A DNA stretch of 64,000 bases from Bigelowiella natans CCMP2755 (GCA_000320545.1 ADNK01000828.1:168927-232926); one strand, 5' to 3'; shown: positions 10,601-20,060, counted from the stretch's first letter. The notes: generated by a model from the letters alone, not told the origin. Numbers and translations: made by a program.

Positions 10601-11034
10601 CGAATTATTCATGATGTAATGGGCTAAGGTTGTAGGGAAGTATACCTAGCGTGATCTGAATTCATGAGTGAACTTGGTAAAAAGAAAGAAAGAAGACAGA
10701 CCGAACTAATATAGAAAGAGAATTGAATCTACGACGGAGGGGAAGGGAAGGTAGTAGCCACCCGCAGTAAGAAGAAGAAGAACAACAACAACATCAACAA
10801 CCAGAACAAGAACAAGAAAAAGGAAAAAAGCACAGGCACTGACTAGAGAGCTCTTATAGTTCCTCTAGGAAGCAAATTCCAAATCTGCATCAGGAATAAA
10901 GCTAAGCCATCGTTGTGACAAATAAATTCATTGATTTTGACTTCTGATAGACAGATAGGCAGACGGACAACAGCAGTAGCAGCAGAAAATTACGAGATTA
11001 CCCACAGAAGTGCAACGGTAGCAGCGTCCTCAAC

Positions 11035-12682
11035 ATGGATTTCCTGAAGAAAGGTCTTGCCTCTGCAAGCAAGATGGTGGGTTCAGCGTCGGACATGCTC
11101 ACATCCGGTGTACTTAAGGAGAGGAGGGACAAGTCGTTGGAGGATGACAGGCAAAAACTCAAGGCCTTGGAAAAGATGTTAGCAAACTTTAAAAAGACAC
11201 TCAAATCCTTCCAAAAGAGGGCATCTAGTCAATCACTTGCACAGCTTCAACTTGCACAGGTTAGTGAATTTATAGTTGTCGTTCTTTTTTTTGCAGCAAG
11301 CAATTACAGTCTGATATCTTATTCAAAGGATTGCCTGTATATTTTTGGCATTGTGGTAACATTTTTTTTGCCGTTATGGTATGTTCGTTAGCACATTGGT
11401 GTAGTCTACAAGGCAAGCAAATCCAGGCAAAAGTCCATTCGAGAGTTCATTGACATCCACACTCAGCTCGATTCGGTACGCTGCCATTAACAGTGATTTA
11501 ATGAAAAGTAAAACCTCTTCTGAAGAAAATTTCTCGCACTCAATATTAGTTATATTTATTGAAAAAGTTTATCCTCTCCCTTGTCATTAGAGTGTAACAG
11601 TCGTAGTATTGACTCCTTCATTATATTATCTAGATGACAGGAGGGATGTTCCATATGAACTTCGATGACGTAGTTGTATCTGTCATTGATGAGTGGGCCG
11701 ATTTAACAAGGAAAACCGCAATATTTCTTAAGAAAACTAATACAGAGATTAACCGGTTGAGAAAGGTAAGGTTGCCATTTCTCTCCTTTTAGTTCGTCAA
11801 TAGCTGACTCGTGGAAGCAGTAGCAGCAGTAGCGGGTGTAACTGTGTGACATTTCTACTATCCTTTCATAACAACACAGGAGGAAGCAGAGTTCATCCGT
11901 GAAAAAAAACAAGCTTTGAAGGCCAAGGATATGGGGAGGTTAAAATGTCATAGACACGCCATCACCATCATCATAACCATTATTATTTGGTTTCACCAGA
12001 TTGACAGAAGAACACAGGAAAGAGATTCGCATGCGAGAGAGTCGGGTGAATCACGTCAAAGGCGTGGTGGCTCAGATGAAATCCGATGTATGTGCGTATA
12101 TCGCTTTATATATTAAAGTATATAATGTGAACGTGTGGGAATGTGAGTAATCTTTAATATGTTTGAATATGAATCAGAAGGTCAGTTGGTACTTAGTTGT
12201 GATAACCGTTACAACAATTATTCAAAAGAAGATTACAAAACAACACCCCTTTCCTTCTTATTATGTTTTTATTATCACCATCGTCATCATCATCATCATC
12301 AAAGCCGTACAAACAATATTACAATCAGTTAAAAGCCATGGTCAAAAAACTGGTTGACAACCGATTCTCCATTTTCGACGAGTGTTTTGTGCGATTGATG
12401 GAAACGCAGGTAACCAGGGACTATTGTGAAACACAACATAAGTATTTTCCTGCTTGACATTATTTCCGCAATCCGAACTTAATAAACAACATTCTTTACG
12501 TTATATTTGATGCATCGTTGTTATCACGCCATCCATTATTCTAACCCGCATGTGCACACTATATGTTTAGGTGTCCTACTATGAGAAGGCTGCAGAAATG
12601 GTGAAAAGCCTGAAAGTGAAAATAAATGTGTACCGTTCTAAGCGAGCAAGAATCCTCTCTTCTCCTGGTACGAAGGCCTATT

Positions 12683-12720
<38 letters not shown>

Positions 12721-14437
12721 ATGATGGTCACTCATTCACGCACTACAACGTAGTAGTAATAAATAGTAGTAATAGTCGTCGTCGTCCAAGAGTAGTGAGT
12801 CACTGGGTTGCATCCCCCCGCATGAAAATGATCTATGATCCTATCCTCCTCCTCCTCCTCCTCCTATTTCCTTCCTTAGTGGAGAAAATGCTTGGTGATG
12901 TTCCTCCAAGCATCCTTGCTCCAGGAGATGTAGACGACGTCGCAGATATTCCAGAGCCAATGATGAGAGAGGTCGAGTAGTAGTCAGTGGTGTTTGATGA
13001 TGATCATGATGATGATGATGATGATGATGATCATATTATACGGTAGTATCACGATTTTCTCTTTACTACTAGCAAATAAAGATGACGTAAGATACAAAAA
13101 TAATAATGAATGAGTGGATAAATGATGAAGCTGCTCTCTCTCCATTTGATAGTAATTATTGTTTTGTTTGACTAATCTCCTCCTGCCAGGATGCTAGTAC
13201 AGATTTTGACTCGAAGAAGAAGAAAGGAGGGAAAGAGAGACACTTCAACGCTACCCAAGTTAACGGCAGCAGCTATGCAGTACACTCGGATGATGATGAA
13301 GACGAAGACGAAAGCTCGGTTAATATTACAAACATATCACATGATCTTGATGATATGATCTTGATGATGGTTATGGTGATGGTGGTGATAGGGCTTGGAT
13401 GAACCTACTATGCCTTCAAGCGACCAGAGAAGGCAACAGGAGGAAGAACAAATAGAAAAAAAGGAACAAGAAGAAAAGGAGCAGCTACCCCCAAGAGTGC
13501 AACTTACACAACAAGACCTGAACAATATGGTTATTATTATTATTATTAGGGTTAGTACTCTGTCTGTAGAGGGGGAGGAGGGATTTAGTCAGTCAGTCAT
13601 TACACCATCGAAGAGAACATAAGAAAAAGAAGAAGAAGACGAAAAAGAAGAAATACACAAGAAGTACTTGTTGTATATTGTTACTGCCACCGCCACAAAA
13701 TTGTATACTTATGATGGCGTTGATGATTCGAATTTCCCTTATTATTGGGTTGGTTTGCCAATAGATGATGGGTTTGATTTCGTGAACGATACTCTTATGA
13801 TGATGATGATGATCATCACCATCAATGACAATAACAGGCGACTGCTGAGATGTATAAGAAAGCAGGCGTTGCTGCCTTCAAAGAGAGCCACTTCGAAGAG
13901 GTCATATTATATTTTTAATTCAACTCTCTCTCTCTCTCTCTCCCTCCCTCCCTCTCGCTCTCTCTTGTGCACTCATACACTCATATATTTATAAAAGTAG
14001 AGGGGGGAGGGGGGGAGTGAAAGAGGGGACACGAAATAAGGCCTTGCCGTCTTTTCTGATATTCGATGATCGCGGTAATGATCTGTTTGTCTCACCTCTC
14101 TCCTCTCCTTTCCTCTTCTTGACTAGGCTGTGACAGAGTTCGGGAAGGCTCTGAGTGTGTTGGGTTTTAATGTCGACAGTAGTAGCAGTAGTAGTAGTAG
14201 TAGTGAAAATAAGACGAGGATCATGATGATGGCGAATGCGGCGGAGAGGTACTTCTACTATTGTTATCAAATAAATAACTACAAATGCCAAGAAATTATT
14301 GTAGTGGTGGTAGTCGTAGTAGTAGTAGTAGCAGTAGGTGGAAATTGAAGAAGTGGTGGTGGAAATGGTGGTTATTAAGGCAACAGCAGCAGCAGCAGCA
14401 GCAGGTTTTTGTAGGGTATGCATGTAAGTAATAACAA

Positions 14438-14470
<33 letters not shown>

Positions 14471-15051
14471 CTACTCAAAGGAGGGCAGATGAGGTAGTGG
14501 ATCTAGCTTGCAGCTGCCTCAGCAACAGGGCAATGGTAATACAAAATAAGAGCGGAGACGAAAGGAGTGACCGTTATGGTGCTGATGATGATTATTGATG
14601 TGCTCTAAACCAATAGTTACTTGAAATGAATAATAACTAACACACCAACAACGTCACCACATGATGTAGTGTCAAAAGCAGCTGAGAAGCTGGAGCAAGA
14701 TCGTAAAGGATGCCTCTCTTTGCATTTCCCTCAAACCTACCAAGTATGATGATGTTTCAATCAACAAGACATTAGGGGAGGGAGCGGGGAGGGGGGATTA
14801 TTGTGCTCAGAAAATCACCAGAAACATGCACATACAACAACACCACACACAAGTTTTCTAGAAATTGATATTTTCCCCTCCTTTCTTCGTCCTGCGCATT
14901 GTTGTCGTTACAATGGTGTTTATGATTACGATGTAATTGCATAGAAACATCATCATGAAGAATCTGATAAACCGAGGTTTTGCATACGAGGCACTGGGAA
15001 AAGTAATTTATGTAGTATAATAAAAGAAAGGAAGAAAGCAGAAAACACCTA

Positions 15052-15092
<41 letters not shown>

Positions 15093-15739
15093 ATACACAT
15101 ACACATGCGGGGAGAGGGAGAGAGAGGGGGGGGGGGGGTGGTGATTGAGTTCTGATATACATGCTACATACATCCAATGATCCATCCTCCTAATAGTTAA
15201 TCCTCTTCTTGACTCCTCACTCTTGAGTTCCTCAATATTGGTTTCCCCACCTTATGCCAGCATCATCATCAGCATCATCAGCATCAGCATTTCATAACTC
15301 CTACTACTACTACTACTTACAATTATGATGTAGATGCAAGAGGCTTTGAATGACTTTCTCTCTGCTCGAAACATGGGAGCTACCACCCCCAAGGTCCTTC
15401 AAACCATCGGCAGGATCAAGAAAGCAGCAAAACAACCAAAAATCATTCCAATGTACGAATCGAGGCCGTATGCGGTAAGTACATAATAGAAGTACAGCAA
15501 CAGCAACAGGAATATCAAAATTCGCAATGATAATTAAACCCCCCCCCCCCCCGCTTACACACAACTTTGTGCGTAAAACAGGGAACTAAAGCATCATCAT
15601 CAACAACAACCAACGCAACGGCGACAACAACAGCGAAAAAGTATGCTGCTGGGACGAAGAACATGAATTCGCAGCAGCAGCAGCAGCAACCAGCAGCTAT
15701 TCCAAGCATCTTTGAAGGATTGGTAAACTTGTGTGTGTA

Positions 15740-15775
<36 letters not shown>

Positions 15776-15813
15776 TAAGAGCGAGGGCAAAGTATTGCTT
15801 TTGATATTAGCCT

Positions 15814-15844
<31 letters not shown>

Positions 15845-16398
15845 GACTGTGGTAGAATGAAGAATTCGACGATGATGATAGTCAATGGTTTGTTCCTTTG
15901 TTGTTGTTATTGTGCATGTTGTTGATTCTCTTTCCGTTCCTTATTATTAGGATATTCCCTCGGGGCACAAACCAGTTCCTCCATCATCATCATCATCATC
16001 ATTGGGTGGTGGTACTACTTCTTCTTCTTCTTCTGCAGCTCCTCCTGCTTCTACCAACCTTTTTGATTGGGACGGAGGTGGTGGTGATGGTGGAGGATCA
16101 TCATCTGGGGTAGTATAGTAGTAGTAGGAGTAGTAGTAAATGTATGGTTAATCACATCTAATATGTGCAGTAGTAGAAGTAGTAGTAATAAAATACCAAT
16201 AATAATTGTATGAATACCACAACATAAGATTTACGATCGGGAAATAGAGAGAGGGGGGGGGGGGGGGGGAGGAGAGAGACAGAGAGAGAGAGAGAGAGAA
16301 GGAGAGAAGGAGAGTAGAAGAGAAGAATGGTGAAATAAAAAACAAATAAAATCGGCAGTGATGTTGACTTGATCGTTTTCATCATCATCATATCTGTT

Positions 16399-16432
<34 letters not shown>

Positions 16433-16579
16433 CTATTATCGTCCGTTCACATACATACATCTCTCATCCATCTACGCAGCAGCAACAACCAACGGCAGCA
16501 GCTGGTAGCGCTGCAAGAAGAGTCTCTAATGATTGGACTAAGTATATTGGAGGAGGGAATTCGGCATCAAGCGTGGTAT

Positions 16580-16624
<45 letters not shown>

Positions 16625-17516
16625 TGTGTATCAATGCTGCTGCTGCTATTCCATGTGTTGTGCCGTATGTGTGCTGGTGGTGGTAGTGGTGATGCTCTGT
16701 CTGTTCCTTGCTTAAAATAACAACAACAACAACAACATTAATTCGCTGATTGATTCTGACATATATGATTATGATGATCATGATCAGATCAATGAGTTCA
16801 ACCCAAATAACGTCAAACCTACGCCGTCCAAAAAATCGGGTGGGAAGAGGAGTTCAGGTAGTAGTAGTAATAATGATGTGTATTATTATACAAGCCCTCA
16901 CACCTCACTCACTGACTCACAAACAAAAGTAATATAAGGAATGATGATCCTCTTGATCATTGCCACAAATTTGGTGGTGGTGGTATATTTTAGCTGTTGT
17001 TATGAGTGCATTGTTTGATTGTCATCCTTATGTATCCTCCTCGCTGCTAGCAGCAGCAGCAGCGCCCACAGTTATGTACTGTGGTATTGCTGTAGGAGGA
17101 ATCATTCACTGCATGTTTGCTTGTGTTTCTACTGGTGGAGGTGATGATGATAGTATGCAAATGCTAATGATATTTCCTGCTAGAACTCCTATTCTTATAA
17201 TAGTTTTTGATGTTATTGTCGTTGTTGTGATCCCTTTCCGTCCCCCCCTTCTCGCTCTCAAGGGATCATATTCGACGAAATATTTGGCTCGGATGGCGGT
17301 GATGAAGGAGATCTTGATGTACCCGCTCCATCATCATCATCATCATCATCGTTACCGACTGGCGACGACGTTAAAGAAAGAGGAGGAGGAGGAGGAGGAA
17401 GCAGCAATAGCCACAATGGTGGCCCAGCACAATCATCATCGTCCTCTGTCATTTTCGATGATCCTGGACAACAACAGGTACTGCTATTGCTACTACTCCT
17501 ACTACCACTACTGCTA

Positions 17517-17560
<44 letters not shown>

Positions 17561-18216
17561 AATATAAATAGATAGATATATTTATATATAAACTGGTATT
17601 GTCTAAATCATCAAAAATAAGAGGACGATTACTGGATCATCTTCGTTTGTGTGGACCGCTGCTCTTCTTCTTCTTCTTCTTCTTCTTCTTCTTCATTTTA
17701 TTACTATTATCATTGTTGTTGTTACTTTCACTAGGGTGGCCCTATCACGCAAATGTGCAACATCCTTGAGGCTATGGAAGACCAAAAATTTTGGCATTTC
17801 GCACACGATAATCTGTCTCCAAACCAGTATGCAAGAATTCCTCGCGACAAGAAGATGGCCATAAGGTGGTATTTGGCTACTACAGTGCTATCATTAATAT
17901 AACAAAATGAACAAGATATGACGACACAGCAAGGAAATTTGATCGATGAGTCATTAATGCCTTGTTGGTAATCTTGGTATTTCTATGCCTCCTCTTCTTC
18001 TCCTTATTCTTATTCTTCGCCTTGTCCTGGATGATGTCACCTAACAAACACCCAAATAGACCTATATGTCTATATTCTAATCATCATCGTCGTCGTCATA
18101 AAGATTCTTGATGATATGATGTACTATATTACACACCCCTCCCTTTGGTAGATATTTGATAAAGTTGGGCATTAACAACACGTCTTTCGTCACAAGCTGG
18201 GAAACAACATTGTGTG

Positions 18217-18249
<33 letters not shown>

Positions 18250-18523
18250 ACGTTACATACCATACCAACCAACACCAAAGATAGATAAAAACGATGATGA
18301 GGAAAAAGGAAGAGAGTGACCGGTTTTACTCTGAGATCGAGGAAAGGGGAGGATAAATATTAGCGACAAAAAGGATTCATGAATTGAACCCACACACACA
18401 CACACACATACACACACACACACACGCCACTTTTTTGCAAACCATTCTAAGAAAAATCAATGATAAATTGTAGGGAGGAGAAGCGTTACATGCAGGCCCT
18501 TGATCAATGGGAGTTTAGGGTGT

Positions 18524-18554
<31 letters not shown>

Positions 18555-18567
18555 CAGTGGTATGATG

Positions 18568-18604
<37 letters not shown>

Positions 18605-19054
18605 GATAATGGTAATAAATTTCTCCTTCCTCATACTTTCTCTCTCCTCATCACCGCGATCGTGATCGTTATCATCATCATTCACAAACAAACTCCAGGG
18701 AGGGATACGGAAAGACTTGATGGCTCTTCTCTCGGGACTTCATAACCTCTGTGATCTAGTCCCATGGCAAGGAAGAAAATGGAAGAGGGTCAGATCATTA
18801 CTTTAGCTGGTCAATAATTAGGATGATGATGATGATATATGGGCTTTACAGATATTGTATTTGTACTCCTCTCTTCCATTCGTGGTTGTTGTTTGTTCTT
18901 ATCACACTTACGATGTTAGCACCACCGCCACCACCGACTGACTAGCCTTGTTTGTTAAAGGTTGGTCTAGGGGATCTTCAAGACCCAAATGCTCGCAAAA
19001 AATACTTCAAAAAGGCTATGCTGGTAACACTATGTAGTCTGGTTTTTCTTTGTG

Positions 19055-19111
<57 letters not shown>

Positions 19112-19383
19112 AATAGAAGGAGTATGGTGGTAGGAATTTTTAGTGGTAGAGGAGGAGGAGTTGTGGTCCGTTGGGATGATAAAACAAATGATGGTGACAT
19201 GTAGTAATATATGCTATCATGCCTGACTCATCAGTATTTTCCTCGACTAACTTTTGTTGGATGATGGTTTTAATCAAACAGATCGTGCATCCTGATCATA
19301 ACCACTCAAAGCCAGCAGCACAGAGAGCTATCACGGAACGTGCCTTCACCGCGTTAACCGAAGCACTCAAGCAAGAAGCTTGA
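11035..19383 (+). CDS. BAR domain - TPR repeats - auxilin/Swa2-type J-domain protein (multi-exon)
   Basis: ATG 11035 MDFLKKGLASASK.. helical BAR-like region ending LVDNRFSIFDECFVRLMETQ|VSYYEKAAEMV (~12660). TPR exons ATAEMYKKAGVAAFKESHFEE|AVTEFGKAL, SCLSNRAM, LINRGFAYEALGK|MQEALNDF (13.8-15.4 kb). C-terminal ALDQWEFR|GGIRKDLMALLSGL, VGLGDLQDPNARKKYFKKAML|IVHPDHNHSKPAAQRAITERAFTALTEALKQEA* with HPD motif. TGA 19381-19383. Some middle exons are approximate. Confidence 0.8.
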
Positions 19384-19599
19384 AGTGGAGAATACTAAAT
19401 ATTACTACAAAGTATTGAACATTCCTCAGAAGTAGCTAGTGAAGATTATGGGCGGGTGAATTGTAATACGCCAACTGATGAGATATATGATTATATCTCA
19501 ACTTGAACGTGGGAAGATTGTACCATTTGCAATCATGGTTATATATCTTCATGCGTGTGGCTAAGAAGAGTCTGCGTATTTTGATTTTATACTTTCAAA

Positions 19600-20060
19600 T
19601 TGTTCGAACCACGTCGACTAGTCGACTGCATGTGGAATTGTTATTCCAGGCACAATAAGCATGAATAAATGCACATACTGACCCATAAGTGGAATAGCGC
19701 TGATACGATGCCCTTAGCCCTAGTCTAGTCGTAGTGCCCATGCATGATGCGCGCATGCACGCCTAGACGAGTAGACAAAAACGTACGTGCTTTTTCAGGT
19801 GCTTAGCTAGCTAGCTAGCTAGTTGCCAAGTTTGCCGCATGCATCGTAGTGTTGACCTAGATGTGGGTTCGTGAATAATCACTTGAAGCACATGCTTGCA
19901 TATGATAGACATGCAATACACTATATATATAATATATATTGTGTATTGCATGTCTAGATGTTTAGATGCATGCGTATGTGCCTAGCTAGCTAGCTAAGCT
20001 AGCAGTGCGCCGTGGTTTTGTTTGTTTCTAGCCTGCGCCCTCGCCTAGCGCCAATAAAGC
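19600..20060. other. CTAG/TAGC/CATG palindrome and hairpin island between convergent 3' ends
   Basis: Perfect palindrome GTCGACTAGTCGAC (19613-19626). Perfect 16-bp inverted repeat TAGACATGCAATACAC (19906-19921) / GTGTATTGCATGTCTA (19941-19956). (TAGC)n runs at ~19805 and ~19983. Confidence 0.85.

What the first reader, a model, noticed from the sequence alone, without database searches (positions are those of the whole stretch)
11035..19383. Single protein joining a BAR domain, TPR repeats and an auxilin-type J domain
The exons splice in frame from an N-terminal amphiphysin/endophilin-like BAR region (QQDLNNM|ATAEMYKKAG links it to the TPRs) to a C-terminal auxilin/Swa2-type J domain (W..LMALLS..L.DL..KKYFKKAML.VHPD). 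Established: yeast Swa2 is UBA-TPR-J, animal auxilin/GAK is kinase/PTEN-like-J, plant auxilin-likes have J only, and BAR proteins sense neck curvature. A BAR-TPR-J fusion would couple curvature sensing or scission directly to Hsc70 uncoating. I do not recall this architecture being described. The linker holds a clathrin-box-like LFDWD (~16060) and acidic-aromatic motifs (IFDEIF, IFDDP).
Basis: partly seen in the sequence, partly recalled or inferred. Interest (0 to 1): 0.7.

Follow-up and report, generated by a model that had tools for sequence, protein, structure and literature searches.

The report
BAR-TPR-auxilin J fusion gene
One 27-exon gene of the alga Bigelowiella natans really does encode a single protein that joins a membrane-curvature (BAR-like) domain to a Swa2/auxilin-type clathrin-uncoating module. 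This architecture is conserved in related algae, and I found no paper that describes it.

Summary
Two independently assembled transcript contigs (L003, L004) match 27 GT-AG exons between 10721 and 19643 at 98.4-100% identity. They include the critical 13529|13838 junction and carry one 936-aa ORF (P0001).

The architecture recurs in three other proteins that are 39-49% identical over local BLASTP alignments:
- Amorphochlora amoebiformis, where the genome model and an MMETSP transcript ORF agree at 837 of 838 residues.
- An unnamed transcriptome, with a complete ORF on a 2.7-kb contig.
- An unidentified assembly, where the gene is one uninterrupted ORF.

The C-terminus is an auxilin-type J domain (PDB profile E about 3e-11; fold Z 14.3 to bovine auxilin; HPD invariant). 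The TPR and J parts align, in the same order, with a fungal UBA-TPR-J (Swa2-like) protein (hhalign 95%, E 3e-8 and 4e-8).

The N-terminal 260 residues are probably a BAR-superfamily domain. Pfam Vps5 passes its cut-off in one orthologue and Pfam BAR is sub-threshold in another. BAR structures top both fold searches, and the domain is basic (pI 9.6-9.9). The B. natans sequence itself has no significant Pfam hit, and the subfamily is unresolved.

The function, curvature-targeted Hsc70 uncoating, is inferred. This is a new variant of a known kind.

The parts
10721..11034 (+). 5' UTR, contiguous with exon 1
   Evidence: Transcript contig L003 aligns at 100% from 10721, and L004 from 10862. An in-frame stop lies at 10948-10950, and the ATG at 11035 is the first after it.
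11035..12667 (+). Exons 1-7 (11035-11259, 11392-11475, 11634-11765, 11880-11938, 12000-12087, 12329-12409, 12571-12667). They encode residues 1-256, the BAR-like domain with a conserved MDFLKKG N-terminus.
   Evidence: Exon matches. AF2 model with long helices. BAR structures top the fold searches. Pfam Vps5 and BAR in orthologues. Atlas features 0.93 to Bin3/Hob3 BAR clusters. pI 9.9.
12880..13529 (+). Exons 8-10 (12880-12971, 13190-13318, 13392-13529). They encode residues 256-375, a charged and acidic low-complexity linker between BAR and TPR. If intron 8 is retained the frame stops at 12978-12980.
   Evidence: The region is poorly conserved in alignment A1.
13838..15474 (+). Exons 11-16 (13838-13900, 14127-14248, 14481-14535, 14670-14743, 14945-15002, 15334-15474). 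They encode residues 376-546: three TPR motifs plus a capping helix, with a B. natans-specific poly-Ser insert.
   Evidence: Sub-threshold Pfam TPR_1/TPR_2 hits. hhalign 95%, E 3e-8 to the TPR region of a fungal UBA-TPR-J protein, P0017. Splice joints in the X19 contig.
15582..17477 (+). Exons 17-21 (15582-15722, 15951-16109, 16480-16575, 16788-16857, 17263-17477). They encode residues 547-773, a disordered linker rich in S, G, P and A, with short hydrophobic-acidic motifs (IFEGLD; LFDWD at 16059-16073; IIFDEIF; VIFDD).
17735..18211 (+). Exons 22-23 (17735-17865, 18152-18211). They encode residues 774-837, a conserved helical module just before the J domain (GGPI..FW.FA.DNL..ARIPRDK..GINN.SF..WE). 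Its fold is unassigned.
   Evidence: Conserved in 3 of 4 orthologues and absent in P0016. AF2 pLDDT 88-93. No convincing fold match. Joint 17865|18152 seen in runs X2 and X19.
18474..19383 (+). Exons 24-27 (18474-18519, 18699-18788, 18961-19023, 19282-19383, stop included). They encode residues 837-936, the auxilin-type J domain with HPD at residues 906-908.
   Evidence: PDB profile E 2.6e-11 to 1.1e-10 to JAC1 and auxilin, against about 0.6 for canonical DnaJ. VIA Z 14.3, rmsd 1.5 A over 90 residues to 1nz6. hhalign 95%, E 4e-8 to the P0017 C-terminus.
19384..19643 (+). 3' UTR
   Evidence: L003 ends at 19576 and L004 at 19643.
19618..20045 (.). CTAG-rich island just beyond the transcript end
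   Evidence: There are 14 CTAG in 19500-19999, against 0-3 per 500 nt anywhere inside the gene. This fits the earlier scan note that such islands mark gene tails. No island lies between the BAR and TPR exons.

Best explanation
Shown: a single 27-exon nuclear gene of Bigelowiella natans (transcript about 10721-19643, + strand) encodes a 936-aa cytosolic protein. In order it has a basic, three-helix BAR-like domain (about residues 1-250), a charged linker, a Swa2-type three-repeat TPR domain (376-533), a disordered linker of about 230 residues carrying short hydrophobic-acidic motifs, a small conserved helical module (774-836), and a C-terminal auxilin-type J domain with an intact HPD (837-936).

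Inferred mechanism: the BAR domain dimerises and binds curved, anionic membrane, such as a vesicle neck, a freshly pinched vesicle or an endosomal tubule. The linker motifs make weak, multivalent contacts with clathrin or adaptors. The J domain then loads Hsc70-ATP onto the coat and triggers disassembly. The TPR domain gives a second docking site for the Hsp70/Hsp90 C-terminal tail, as proposed for Swa2.

On this reading the protein hard-wires in one chain a coupling that other lineages achieve with separate proteins: plant BAR-SH3 proteins SH3P1-3 recruit AUXILIN-LIKE1, and animal and yeast BAR-SH3 proteins (endophilins, amphiphysins) recruit uncoating factors.
For: One gene:
- Transcript contigs L003 and L004 cover all exons at 98.4-100% and hold one ORF.
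- Partial MMETSP ORFs cross the BAR-TPR junction.
- The X19 spliced contig joins TPR to J.
- The only CTAG gene-tail island lies after 19.6 kb.

Conserved architecture:
- P0003 (Amorphochlora; the genome model and the MMETSP transcript ORF agree at 837 of 838 residues), P0004 (complete ORF on transcript contig L002) and P0016 (one uninterrupted ORF in L005) share it.

J domain:
- PDB profile hits to auxilin and JAC1 at E about 3e-11, against about 0.6 for DnaJ.
- VIA Z 14.3, 13.9 and 12.6, with the next hit at 6.4.
- HPD is invariant.

TPR-J module:
- It is collinear with a fungal UBA-TPR-J protein, with hhalign probability 95% for both parts.
- The nearest Atlas clusters are fungal TPR/UBA-named families: 'UBA domain-containing protein 7' (0.91) and a PF09145 Ubiq-assoc plus TPR cluster (0.88).

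BAR:
- Pfam Vps5 scores 29.6 bits (cut-off 27) in P0003, and E 4.3e-8 on the isolated domain. Pfam BAR gives E 9.6e-5 in P0016.
- The Foldseek top hits are SNX1/SNX5, a Galdieria BAR protein, endophilin, Bin1, FAM92A and arfaptin.
- VIA Z is 10.1 and 10.0 to 3caz and the SNX1 BAR.
- Atlas features score 0.93 (194 of 256 shared) to Bin3/Hob3/BAR clusters.
- pI is 9.6-9.9 with a net positive charge.

Precedent for BAR-to-uncoating coupling: bioRxiv 10.1101/2022.01.07.475403.
Against: - The B. natans N-terminal domain has no significant Pfam hit of its own.
- The profile search against PDB gives only SNX9 BAR at E 0.26.
- Foldseek E-values are all 0.017 or higher, and Z of about 10 is within the range that helical bundles reach by chance.
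- The AF2 model rests on 4 sequences (pLDDT 72), and dimerisation was not modelled.
- No strict clathrin box, DPF, DLL, NPF or WxxF motif is conserved in the linker. LFDWD is specific to B. natans.
- No clathrin, Hsc70 or membrane binding was tested.
- In raw RNA reads (X21, about 6% of the run sampled), exons 8-10 had depth 1.6-4.4 while the TPR and J exons had about 0-0.2. This could mean a more abundant short isoform.
Confidence: 0.55

Rival explanations
1. The N-terminal domain is SNX-BAR-like and the protein works on endosomal tubules rather than at endocytic pits. On this reading it is a one-chain analogue of the SNX1/RME-8/Hsc70 partnership, which regulates endosomal clathrin and retrograde sorting.
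For: The only Pfam hit above its curated cut-off is Vps5 (SNX-BAR C-terminal) in the Amorphochlora orthologue. UniRef names that protein Sorting nexin/Vps5-like. The top Foldseek hits are SNX1-SNX5/ESCPE-1 and the SNX1 BAR. The best PDB profile hit is the SNX9 BAR.
Against: No PX domain is present. The J domain is auxilin-type, not RME-8-type. Another orthologue matches classical BAR, PF03114, and the language-model neighbours are Bin3, Hob3 and endophilin. The conserved N-terminal MDFLKKG helix resembles an N-BAR H0 helix (my own comparison; one search gives a moderate hydrophobic moment).
Confidence: 0.2
2. The N-terminal region is a generic dimerising coiled coil that does not sense membranes. 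The protein would then be a Swa2-like Hsp70 co-chaperone whose N-terminus only provides oligomerisation or binds another partner.
For: There is no significant family hit for the B. natans sequence. The single-sequence PDB searches with P0003 and P0016 are empty of BAR hits. The shape search of the Atlas was uninformative. Long helical models often reach Z of about 10 by chance (note).
Against: BAR-clan hits appear in two orthologues. BAR domains, rather than random coiled coils, dominate both fold-search lists and cover residues 30-235. All ten best named Atlas neighbours belong to BAR-type families (BAR, Arfaptin, FAM92). The domain is strongly basic in all four orthologues.
Confidence: 0.15
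3. The protein is a membrane-tethered general Hsp70/Hsp90 co-chaperone unrelated to clathrin, for example for protein quality control or for import at a curved organelle membrane of this alga with a secondary plastid.
For: No conserved canonical clathrin or adaptor motifs are present. A TPR plus J pairing also defines non-clathrin co-chaperones such as DNAJC7 and p58IPK, which appear as weaker neighbours.
Against: The J domain is specifically auxilin-type and stands far above other J domains (Z 14 against about 6; E 1e-11 against about 0.6). The TPR matches the Swa2-like fungal family specifically. No signal or transit peptide is evident: the N-terminus is the conserved BAR-type helix.
Confidence: 0.08
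4. There are two adjacent genes (a BAR protein and a TPR-J protein), joined only by read-through transcription or by assembly error.
For: Coverage in X21 raw reads is uneven, high on exons 8-10 and near zero downstream. No exon 10-to-11 joint was listed in the read-laying output. The JGI Bigna1 model 60861 covers only the last 157 residues.
Against: The junction is a spliced GT-AG intron, in frame, in two independent assemblies and two further partial transcripts. The architecture is conserved in three other organisms, and in one of them the gene is a single uninterrupted ORF in an assembly contig with neighbouring genes on both strands. No CTAG tail island lies between the halves.
Confidence: 0.02

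Closest known systems
Yeast/fungal Swa2 (auxilin homologue; architecture of clathrin-binding motifs, UBA, TPR and J)
   Same: It has a TPR domain followed by a C-terminal auxilin-type J domain, in the same order. Both parts align with a Penicillium UBA-TPR-J protein at hhalign 95%. The nearest language-model clusters are fungal TPR/UBA-named families.
   Different: There is no UBA domain and there are no N-terminal clathrin-binding motifs. Instead it has an N-terminal BAR-like domain. The long disordered motif-bearing linker lies between TPR and J, and an extra conserved helical module precedes the J domain.
Animal auxilin/GAK and plant auxilin-likes (including JAC1)
   Same: The J domain has the auxilin-specific fold and an intact HPD at the extreme C-terminus. 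A disordered region lies upstream of it.
   Different: There is no kinase or PTEN-like/C2 lipid-sensing region (no Pfam hits). Membrane targeting would come from a BAR domain instead. It carries TPR repeats, which auxilin and GAK lack.
BAR-SH3 proteins that recruit uncoating factors: plant SH3P1-3 with AUXILIN-LIKE1, and animal and yeast endophilins and amphiphysins
   Same: The functional logic is the same: a BAR protein at a late stage of clathrin-mediated endocytosis brings in the uncoating machinery (bioRxiv 10.1101/2022.01.07.475403).
   Different: In those systems the link is a non-covalent SH3-proline interaction between two proteins. Here BAR and J are one polypeptide and no SH3 domain is present.
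SNX-BAR sorting nexins (Vps5/SNX1)
   Same: The Pfam Vps5 match in the Amorphochlora orthologue and the top structural matches are to SNX1/SNX5 BAR domains.
   Different: There is no PX domain, the BAR-like domain is N-terminal rather than C-terminal, and it is fused to a co-chaperone module.

Membership tests
BAR domain superfamily | Significant profile match to a BAR-clan family | tested here: inconclusive
   Vps5 (PF09325) scores 29.6 bits against a cut-off of 27 in orthologue P0003, and E 4.3e-8 on the isolated domain. BAR (PF03114) scores 20 bits, below its 28.5 cut-off, in P0016. There is no hit for B. natans P0001 or for P0004. The profile of the 4 sequences against PDB gives only SNX9 BAR at E 0.26.
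BAR domain superfamily | About 200-250 residues forming three long antiparallel helices | tested here: met
   The AF2 model (pLDDT 72) has helices 33-104 (kinked), 113-164 and 170-247. BAR domains head both the Foldseek and VIA lists and cover residues 30-235, with Z 10.1 and 10.0. These scores are not individually significant.
BAR domain superfamily | Crescent-shaped homodimer | not testable with these tools
   Only single-chain prediction was available.
BAR domain superfamily | Basic membrane-binding surface, with or without an N-terminal amphipathic helix | tested here: inconclusive
   The domain has pI 9.6-9.9 and a net charge of +13 to +23 in all four orthologues. The conserved MDFLKKG..ASK N-terminus has a moderate hydrophobic moment of 0.45, and it is missing in P0016. 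Surface mapping was not done.
Auxilin-type J-domain proteins | C-terminal J domain with an HPD tripeptide | tested here: met
   H906-P907-D908 are invariant in 4 of 4 sequences, and the domain ends the protein.
Auxilin-type J-domain proteins | Auxilin-specific J-domain sequence and fold, meaning closer to auxilin than to canonical DnaJ | tested here: met
   Profile E is 2.6e-11 to 1.1e-10 to 3ag7, 1nz6, 1xi5 and 1n4c, against 0.6-0.9 for DnaJ domains. VIA Z is 14.3 (rmsd 1.5 A over 90 residues), 13.9 and 12.6, and the next hit is 6.4.
Auxilin-type J-domain proteins | Clathrin- or adaptor-binding short motifs in a disordered region | tested here: inconclusive
   The disordered linker is present. 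No strict clathrin box, DPF/W, NPF or WxxF is found in any orthologue. LFDWD (relaxed box) occurs only in B. natans. The recurring motifs are [IVL]F[DE][DE] and F[DES]xxF. Binding was not tested.
Auxilin-type J-domain proteins | Stimulates Hsc70 and disassembles clathrin coats | not testable with these tools
   This needs biochemistry.
Swa2 family (fungal UBA-TPR-J) | Swa2-type TPR domain upstream of the J domain | tested here: met
   hhalign gives 95%, E 3e-8 (TPR, 136 columns) and 95%, E 4e-8 (J, 79 columns) to P0017, in the same order.
Swa2 family (fungal UBA-TPR-J) | UBA domain | tested here: not met
   No UBA hit in P0001, P0003, P0004 or P0016. P0017 does have UBA_7 and UBA.
SNX-BAR sorting nexins | PX domain preceding the BAR domain | tested here: not met
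   No PX hit in any orthologue, and the BAR-like domain starts at residue 1.
Auxilin/GAK (metazoan architecture) | PTEN-like phosphatase/C2 region, with or without a kinase | tested here: not met
   No such Pfam hits.

The most novel reading that the evidence does not exclude
Chlorarachniophytes time clathrin uncoating by membrane curvature alone. A BAR dimer would replace the PTEN-like lipid sensor of auxilin/GAK and the SH3-mediated recruitment used by plants, delivering two J domains directly to the neck or the new vesicle. That would make this protein a natural 'Rosetta stone' fusion showing that BAR-to-auxilin coupling is a general, ancient logic of endocytosis. It would also be a minimal tool for testing whether curvature sensing is enough to trigger Hsc70 uncoating.
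Probability: 0.3. Interest if true: 0.7.

Novelty: new variant of a known kind. Interest (0 to 1): 0.55.

Why it matters
How uncoating is timed to follow scission is still debated. Animals use phosphoinositide conversion sensed by auxilin's PTEN-like domain, downstream of the BAR protein endophilin. Plants appear to use BAR-SH3 proteins to recruit auxilin-likes directly.

A natural covalent fusion of a BAR-like domain to a Swa2/auxilin module, conserved across several algae, is independent evolutionary evidence for a functional BAR-uncoating link. It also offers a compact, testable protein for three assays: liposome tubulation, Hsc70 ATPase stimulation and clathrin-cage disassembly.

There is also an annotation point. 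The reference B. natans gene model captures only the last 157 residues, so proteome-based surveys of trafficking machinery would miss the architecture.

Tried and rejected
- Pfam on single exon translations gave nothing useful, because the exons are too short.
- Read laying (the single call allowed, on 12860-18859) confirmed the TPR-to-J splicing. It did not list the exon 10-to-11 joint. Many listed joints and loose ends were artefacts of low-complexity triplet repeats (13621-13652, 15258-15290, 15671-15690, 18080-18099). The junction was settled instead by transcript contigs.
- The word-indexed homologue search on the J region (775-936) found only the query and one orthologue.
- The full-length and alignment searches found only the four family members plus one fungal Swa2-like protein.
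- Two metagenome scans (A1 and A3 patterns) found no relatives. Because they did not recover the gene's own transcript assemblies, their silence says nothing about distribution.
- Single-sequence PDB searches with two orthologue N-termini found nothing relevant.
- The shape search of the Atlas with the BAR model was uninformative, with TM below 0.5.
- The whole-protein Atlas search gave no usable hit.
- The module before the J domain got no convincing fold match.
- My first acceptor for exon 6 (12305) was wrong. Transcripts use 12329.
- The two-gene reading was rejected (see rival explanations).
- The organisms behind P0004 (JGI 3300017207) and P0016 (GCA_977009605.1) could not be named with the tools available.

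Full report
**Context.** The window is intron-rich eukaryotic DNA, and the introns are full of microsatellites and triplet repeats. Earlier scan notes name the genome as Bigelowiella natans. This agrees with the EukProt/JGI Bigna1 label on one cluster member.

**Gene model.** Reading the + strand gave a continuous GT-AG, in-frame model from ATG 11035 to the stop at 19381-19383.

An HMMER search of the 75-residue exon 1 against 1.84 billion representatives returned four proteins. One of them, P0001 (936 aa), is 100% identical over exon 1. P0001 is encoded on two transcript contigs from different JGI samples, L003 (3318 nt) and L004 (3244 nt). BLASTN of these contigs against the window gives 27 collinear blocks at 98.4-100% identity:

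- 10721-11259 (5' UTR plus exon 1), 11392-11475, 11634-11765, 11880-11938, 12000-12087, 12329-12409, 12571-12667
- 12880-12971, 13190-13318, 13392-13529
- 13838-13900, 14127-14248, 14481-14535, 14670-14743, 14945-15002, 15334-15474
- 15582-15722, 15951-16109, 16480-16575, 16788-16857, 17263-17477
- 17735-17865, 18152-18211
- 18474-18519, 18699-18788, 18961-19023, 19282-19643 (stop at 19381-19383, then 3' UTR)

Two further partial MMETSP ORFs, P0006 (residues 1-427) and P0007 (residues 1-582), also cross it. They break off at poly-Ser and poly-Gln repeats, which are typical assembly break points.

**Read evidence.** It revealed an exon absent from my first model, 18152-18211.

That call did not list the exon 10-to-11 joint. 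In raw RNA reads (X21, about 6% of the run sampled), depth was 1.6-4.4 over 12860-13459 and about 0-0.2 over the TPR and J exons. I leave this unexplained. It may reflect sampling or repeat masking, or a more abundant short isoform; retention of intron 8 would give a stop at 12978-12980.

There are 14 CTAG per 500 nt there, against 0-3 inside the gene, and none between the BAR and TPR exons.

**Conservation.** Three other proteins share the full N-to-C layout:

- P0003 (838 aa) is from Amorphochlora amoebiformis, NCBI GAB5368949.1, and its gene spans 18.6 kb in the genome. It agrees at 837 of 838 residues with an MMETSP transcript ORF, UniRef A0A7S0DGJ3, which is automatically named 'Sorting nexin/Vps5-like C-terminal domain-containing protein'.
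- P0004 (847 aa) is a complete ORF on a 2734-nt transcript contig from JGI 3300017207.
- P0016 (779 aa) is one uninterrupted ORF on a 15.9-kb contig of GCA_977009605.1, with neighbouring genes on both strands, and is also on a Logan contig.

Local BLASTP identities to P0001 are 39-49%. The word-indexed searches found no other full-length relatives. No Atlas cluster of 50 or more members resembles the whole protein. Within what these tools reach, the family is small and confined to chlorarachniophytes and unidentified relatives.

**J domain.** A profile of the four C-termini hits the Arabidopsis JAC1 J domain (3ag7, E 2.6e-11) and bovine auxilin (1nz6, 1xi5, 1n4c; E 3.3e-11 to 1.1e-10). Canonical DnaJ domains score E 0.6-0.9.

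The AF2 model (pLDDT 78) superposes on auxilin 1nz6 at Z 14.3 (rmsd 1.5 A over 90 residues, 30% identity). It gives Z 13.9 to JAC1 and 12.6 to 1n4c, and the next hit is 6.4. H906-P907-D908 are invariant. The auxilin-type assignment is solid.

**TPR.** Pfam gives only sub-threshold TPR_1 and TPR_2 hits. However, the alignment search pulled out a Penicillium protein, P0017, with UBA and TPR domains. hhalign matches residues 367-533 of P0001 to its TPR region (95%, E 3e-8) and the J region to its C-terminus (95%, E 4e-8), in the same order.

The nearest Atlas clusters to residues 367-936 are 'UBA domain-containing protein 7' (0.91) and a PF09145 Ubiq-assoc plus TPR cluster (0.88), both commonest in Ascomycota. 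By my own knowledge these are Swa2-type families. The TPR-J module is therefore Swa2-like. No UBA domain is present.

**BAR.** The evidence is convergent but individually modest:

- Pfam Vps5 is above its cut-off in P0003 (29.6 against 27 bits; E 4.3e-8 for the isolated domain). Pfam BAR is below its cut-off in P0016 (E 9.6e-5). There is nothing for P0001 or P0004.
- The AF2 model of residues 1-262 (pLDDT 72, 4 sequences) is a bundle of long helices.
- Foldseek's top rows are almost all BAR, F-BAR or I-BAR domains: SNX1-SNX5, ESCPE-1, a Galdieria BAR protein, endophilin, Bin1, FAM92A and arfaptin. All have E of 0.017 or higher.
- The exhaustive VIA search is headed by 3caz (Z 10.1) and the SNX1 BAR (Z 10.0), a level that helical proteins can reach by chance.
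- Language-model features place the domain next to Bin3, Hob3 and BAR clusters (0.93; 194 of 256 features), and all ten best named neighbours belong to BAR-type families (BAR, Arfaptin, FAM92).
- The domain is strongly basic (pI 9.6-9.9). Three orthologues share an MDFLKKG..ASK N-terminal helix of moderate amphipathicity.

I put BAR-superfamily membership at about 0.8. The subfamily (classical N-BAR or SNX-BAR-like) is open. There is no PX or SH3 domain.

**Other parts.**

- Residues 256-375 form a charged, poorly conserved linker.
- Residues 540-773 are disordered (rich in S, G, P and A). They carry recurring motifs of the form [IVL]F[DE][DE], F[DES]xxF and FxGLD.
- Residues 774-836 form a well-predicted small helical module (pLDDT 88-93). 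It is conserved in three orthologues and absent in P0016. It has no convincing structural match, and it could not be folded alone.

**Mechanism (inferred).** A BAR dimer targets curved, acidic membrane. The linker motifs engage coat components weakly and multivalently. The auxilin-type J domain activates Hsc70 to strip clathrin. The TPR domain may dock the Hsp70/Hsp90 C-terminal tail.

This puts into one chain the relationship reported for plant SH3P1-3 (BAR-SH3) recruiting AUXILIN-LIKE1, and for animal and yeast BAR-SH3 proteins recruiting uncoating factors (bioRxiv 10.1101/2022.01.07.475403). The main rival is an endosomal, SNX-like role. Lesser rivals are a plain coiled coil and a non-clathrin co-chaperone. 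The two-gene reading is essentially excluded.

**Novelty.** Full-text searches found no paper describing a BAR-TPR-J or BAR-auxilin fusion, and none treating the B. natans auxilin. The sequences are in public databases under automatic names, and the reference Bigna1 model (60861) is only the last 157 residues. I rate this a new variant of a known kind (the auxilin/Swa2 family). It is lineage-restricted and of moderate-to-good interest to membrane-trafficking specialists.

Noticed in passing
window 17735-19383 (P0005): The public JGI Bigna1/EukProt gene model 60861 for this locus is only a 157-aa fragment (residues 780-936). The reference proteome therefore hides the BAR and TPR parts.
   Followed up: partly
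window 12860-13660 compared with 13838-18860: In raw RNA-seq run X21 (about 6% sampled), exons 8-10 had depth 1.6-4.4 while the TPR and J exons had about 0-0.2. This could mean a short BAR-only isoform (retained intron 8 gives a stop at 12978-12980), or it could be a sampling or repeat-masking artefact.
   Followed up: no
window 17836-18179 and 13565-13806: Unspliced contigs in runs X2 and X1 cover intron sequence. They lie between exons 22 and 23 (alongside the spliced form) and inside intron 10. This indicates intron retention or pre-mRNA in these libraries.
   Followed up: no
window 14176-14205, 15671-15690 and other coding triplet repeats: Coding poly-Ser, poly-Gln and poly-Gly tracts vary in length between B. 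natans assemblies. P0008 differs from P0001 by +SS, +Q, +S and GG to E. These tracts also break short-read transcript assemblies.
   Followed up: partly
window 19618-20045: A dense CTAG island (14 per 500 nt, including runs spaced 4 bases apart) lies immediately after the 3' UTR. This matches the earlier scan note on CTAG scars at gene tails.
   Followed up: partly
L001:22265-24634 (Amorphochlora amoebiformis): The gene next to the Amorphochlora orthologue, on the opposite strand, encodes an SH3-domain protein. This is curious, because BAR-SH3 proteins recruit auxilin-likes in plants. It may be coincidence.
   Followed up: no
L005:2001-4340 (GCA_977009605.1): In this unidentified organism the orthologue is one uninterrupted ORF, against 26 introns in B. 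natans. It lacks both the MDFLKKG N-terminus and the helical module before the J domain.
   Followed up: no
P0014 and P0015 (MMETSP Transcript_9759): A second transcript isoform of the P0004 organism splits the ORF into a 226-aa BAR piece and a 617-aa TPR-J piece. This could be a retained intron or a frameshift, and it hints that BAR-only products may occur there too.
   Followed up: no
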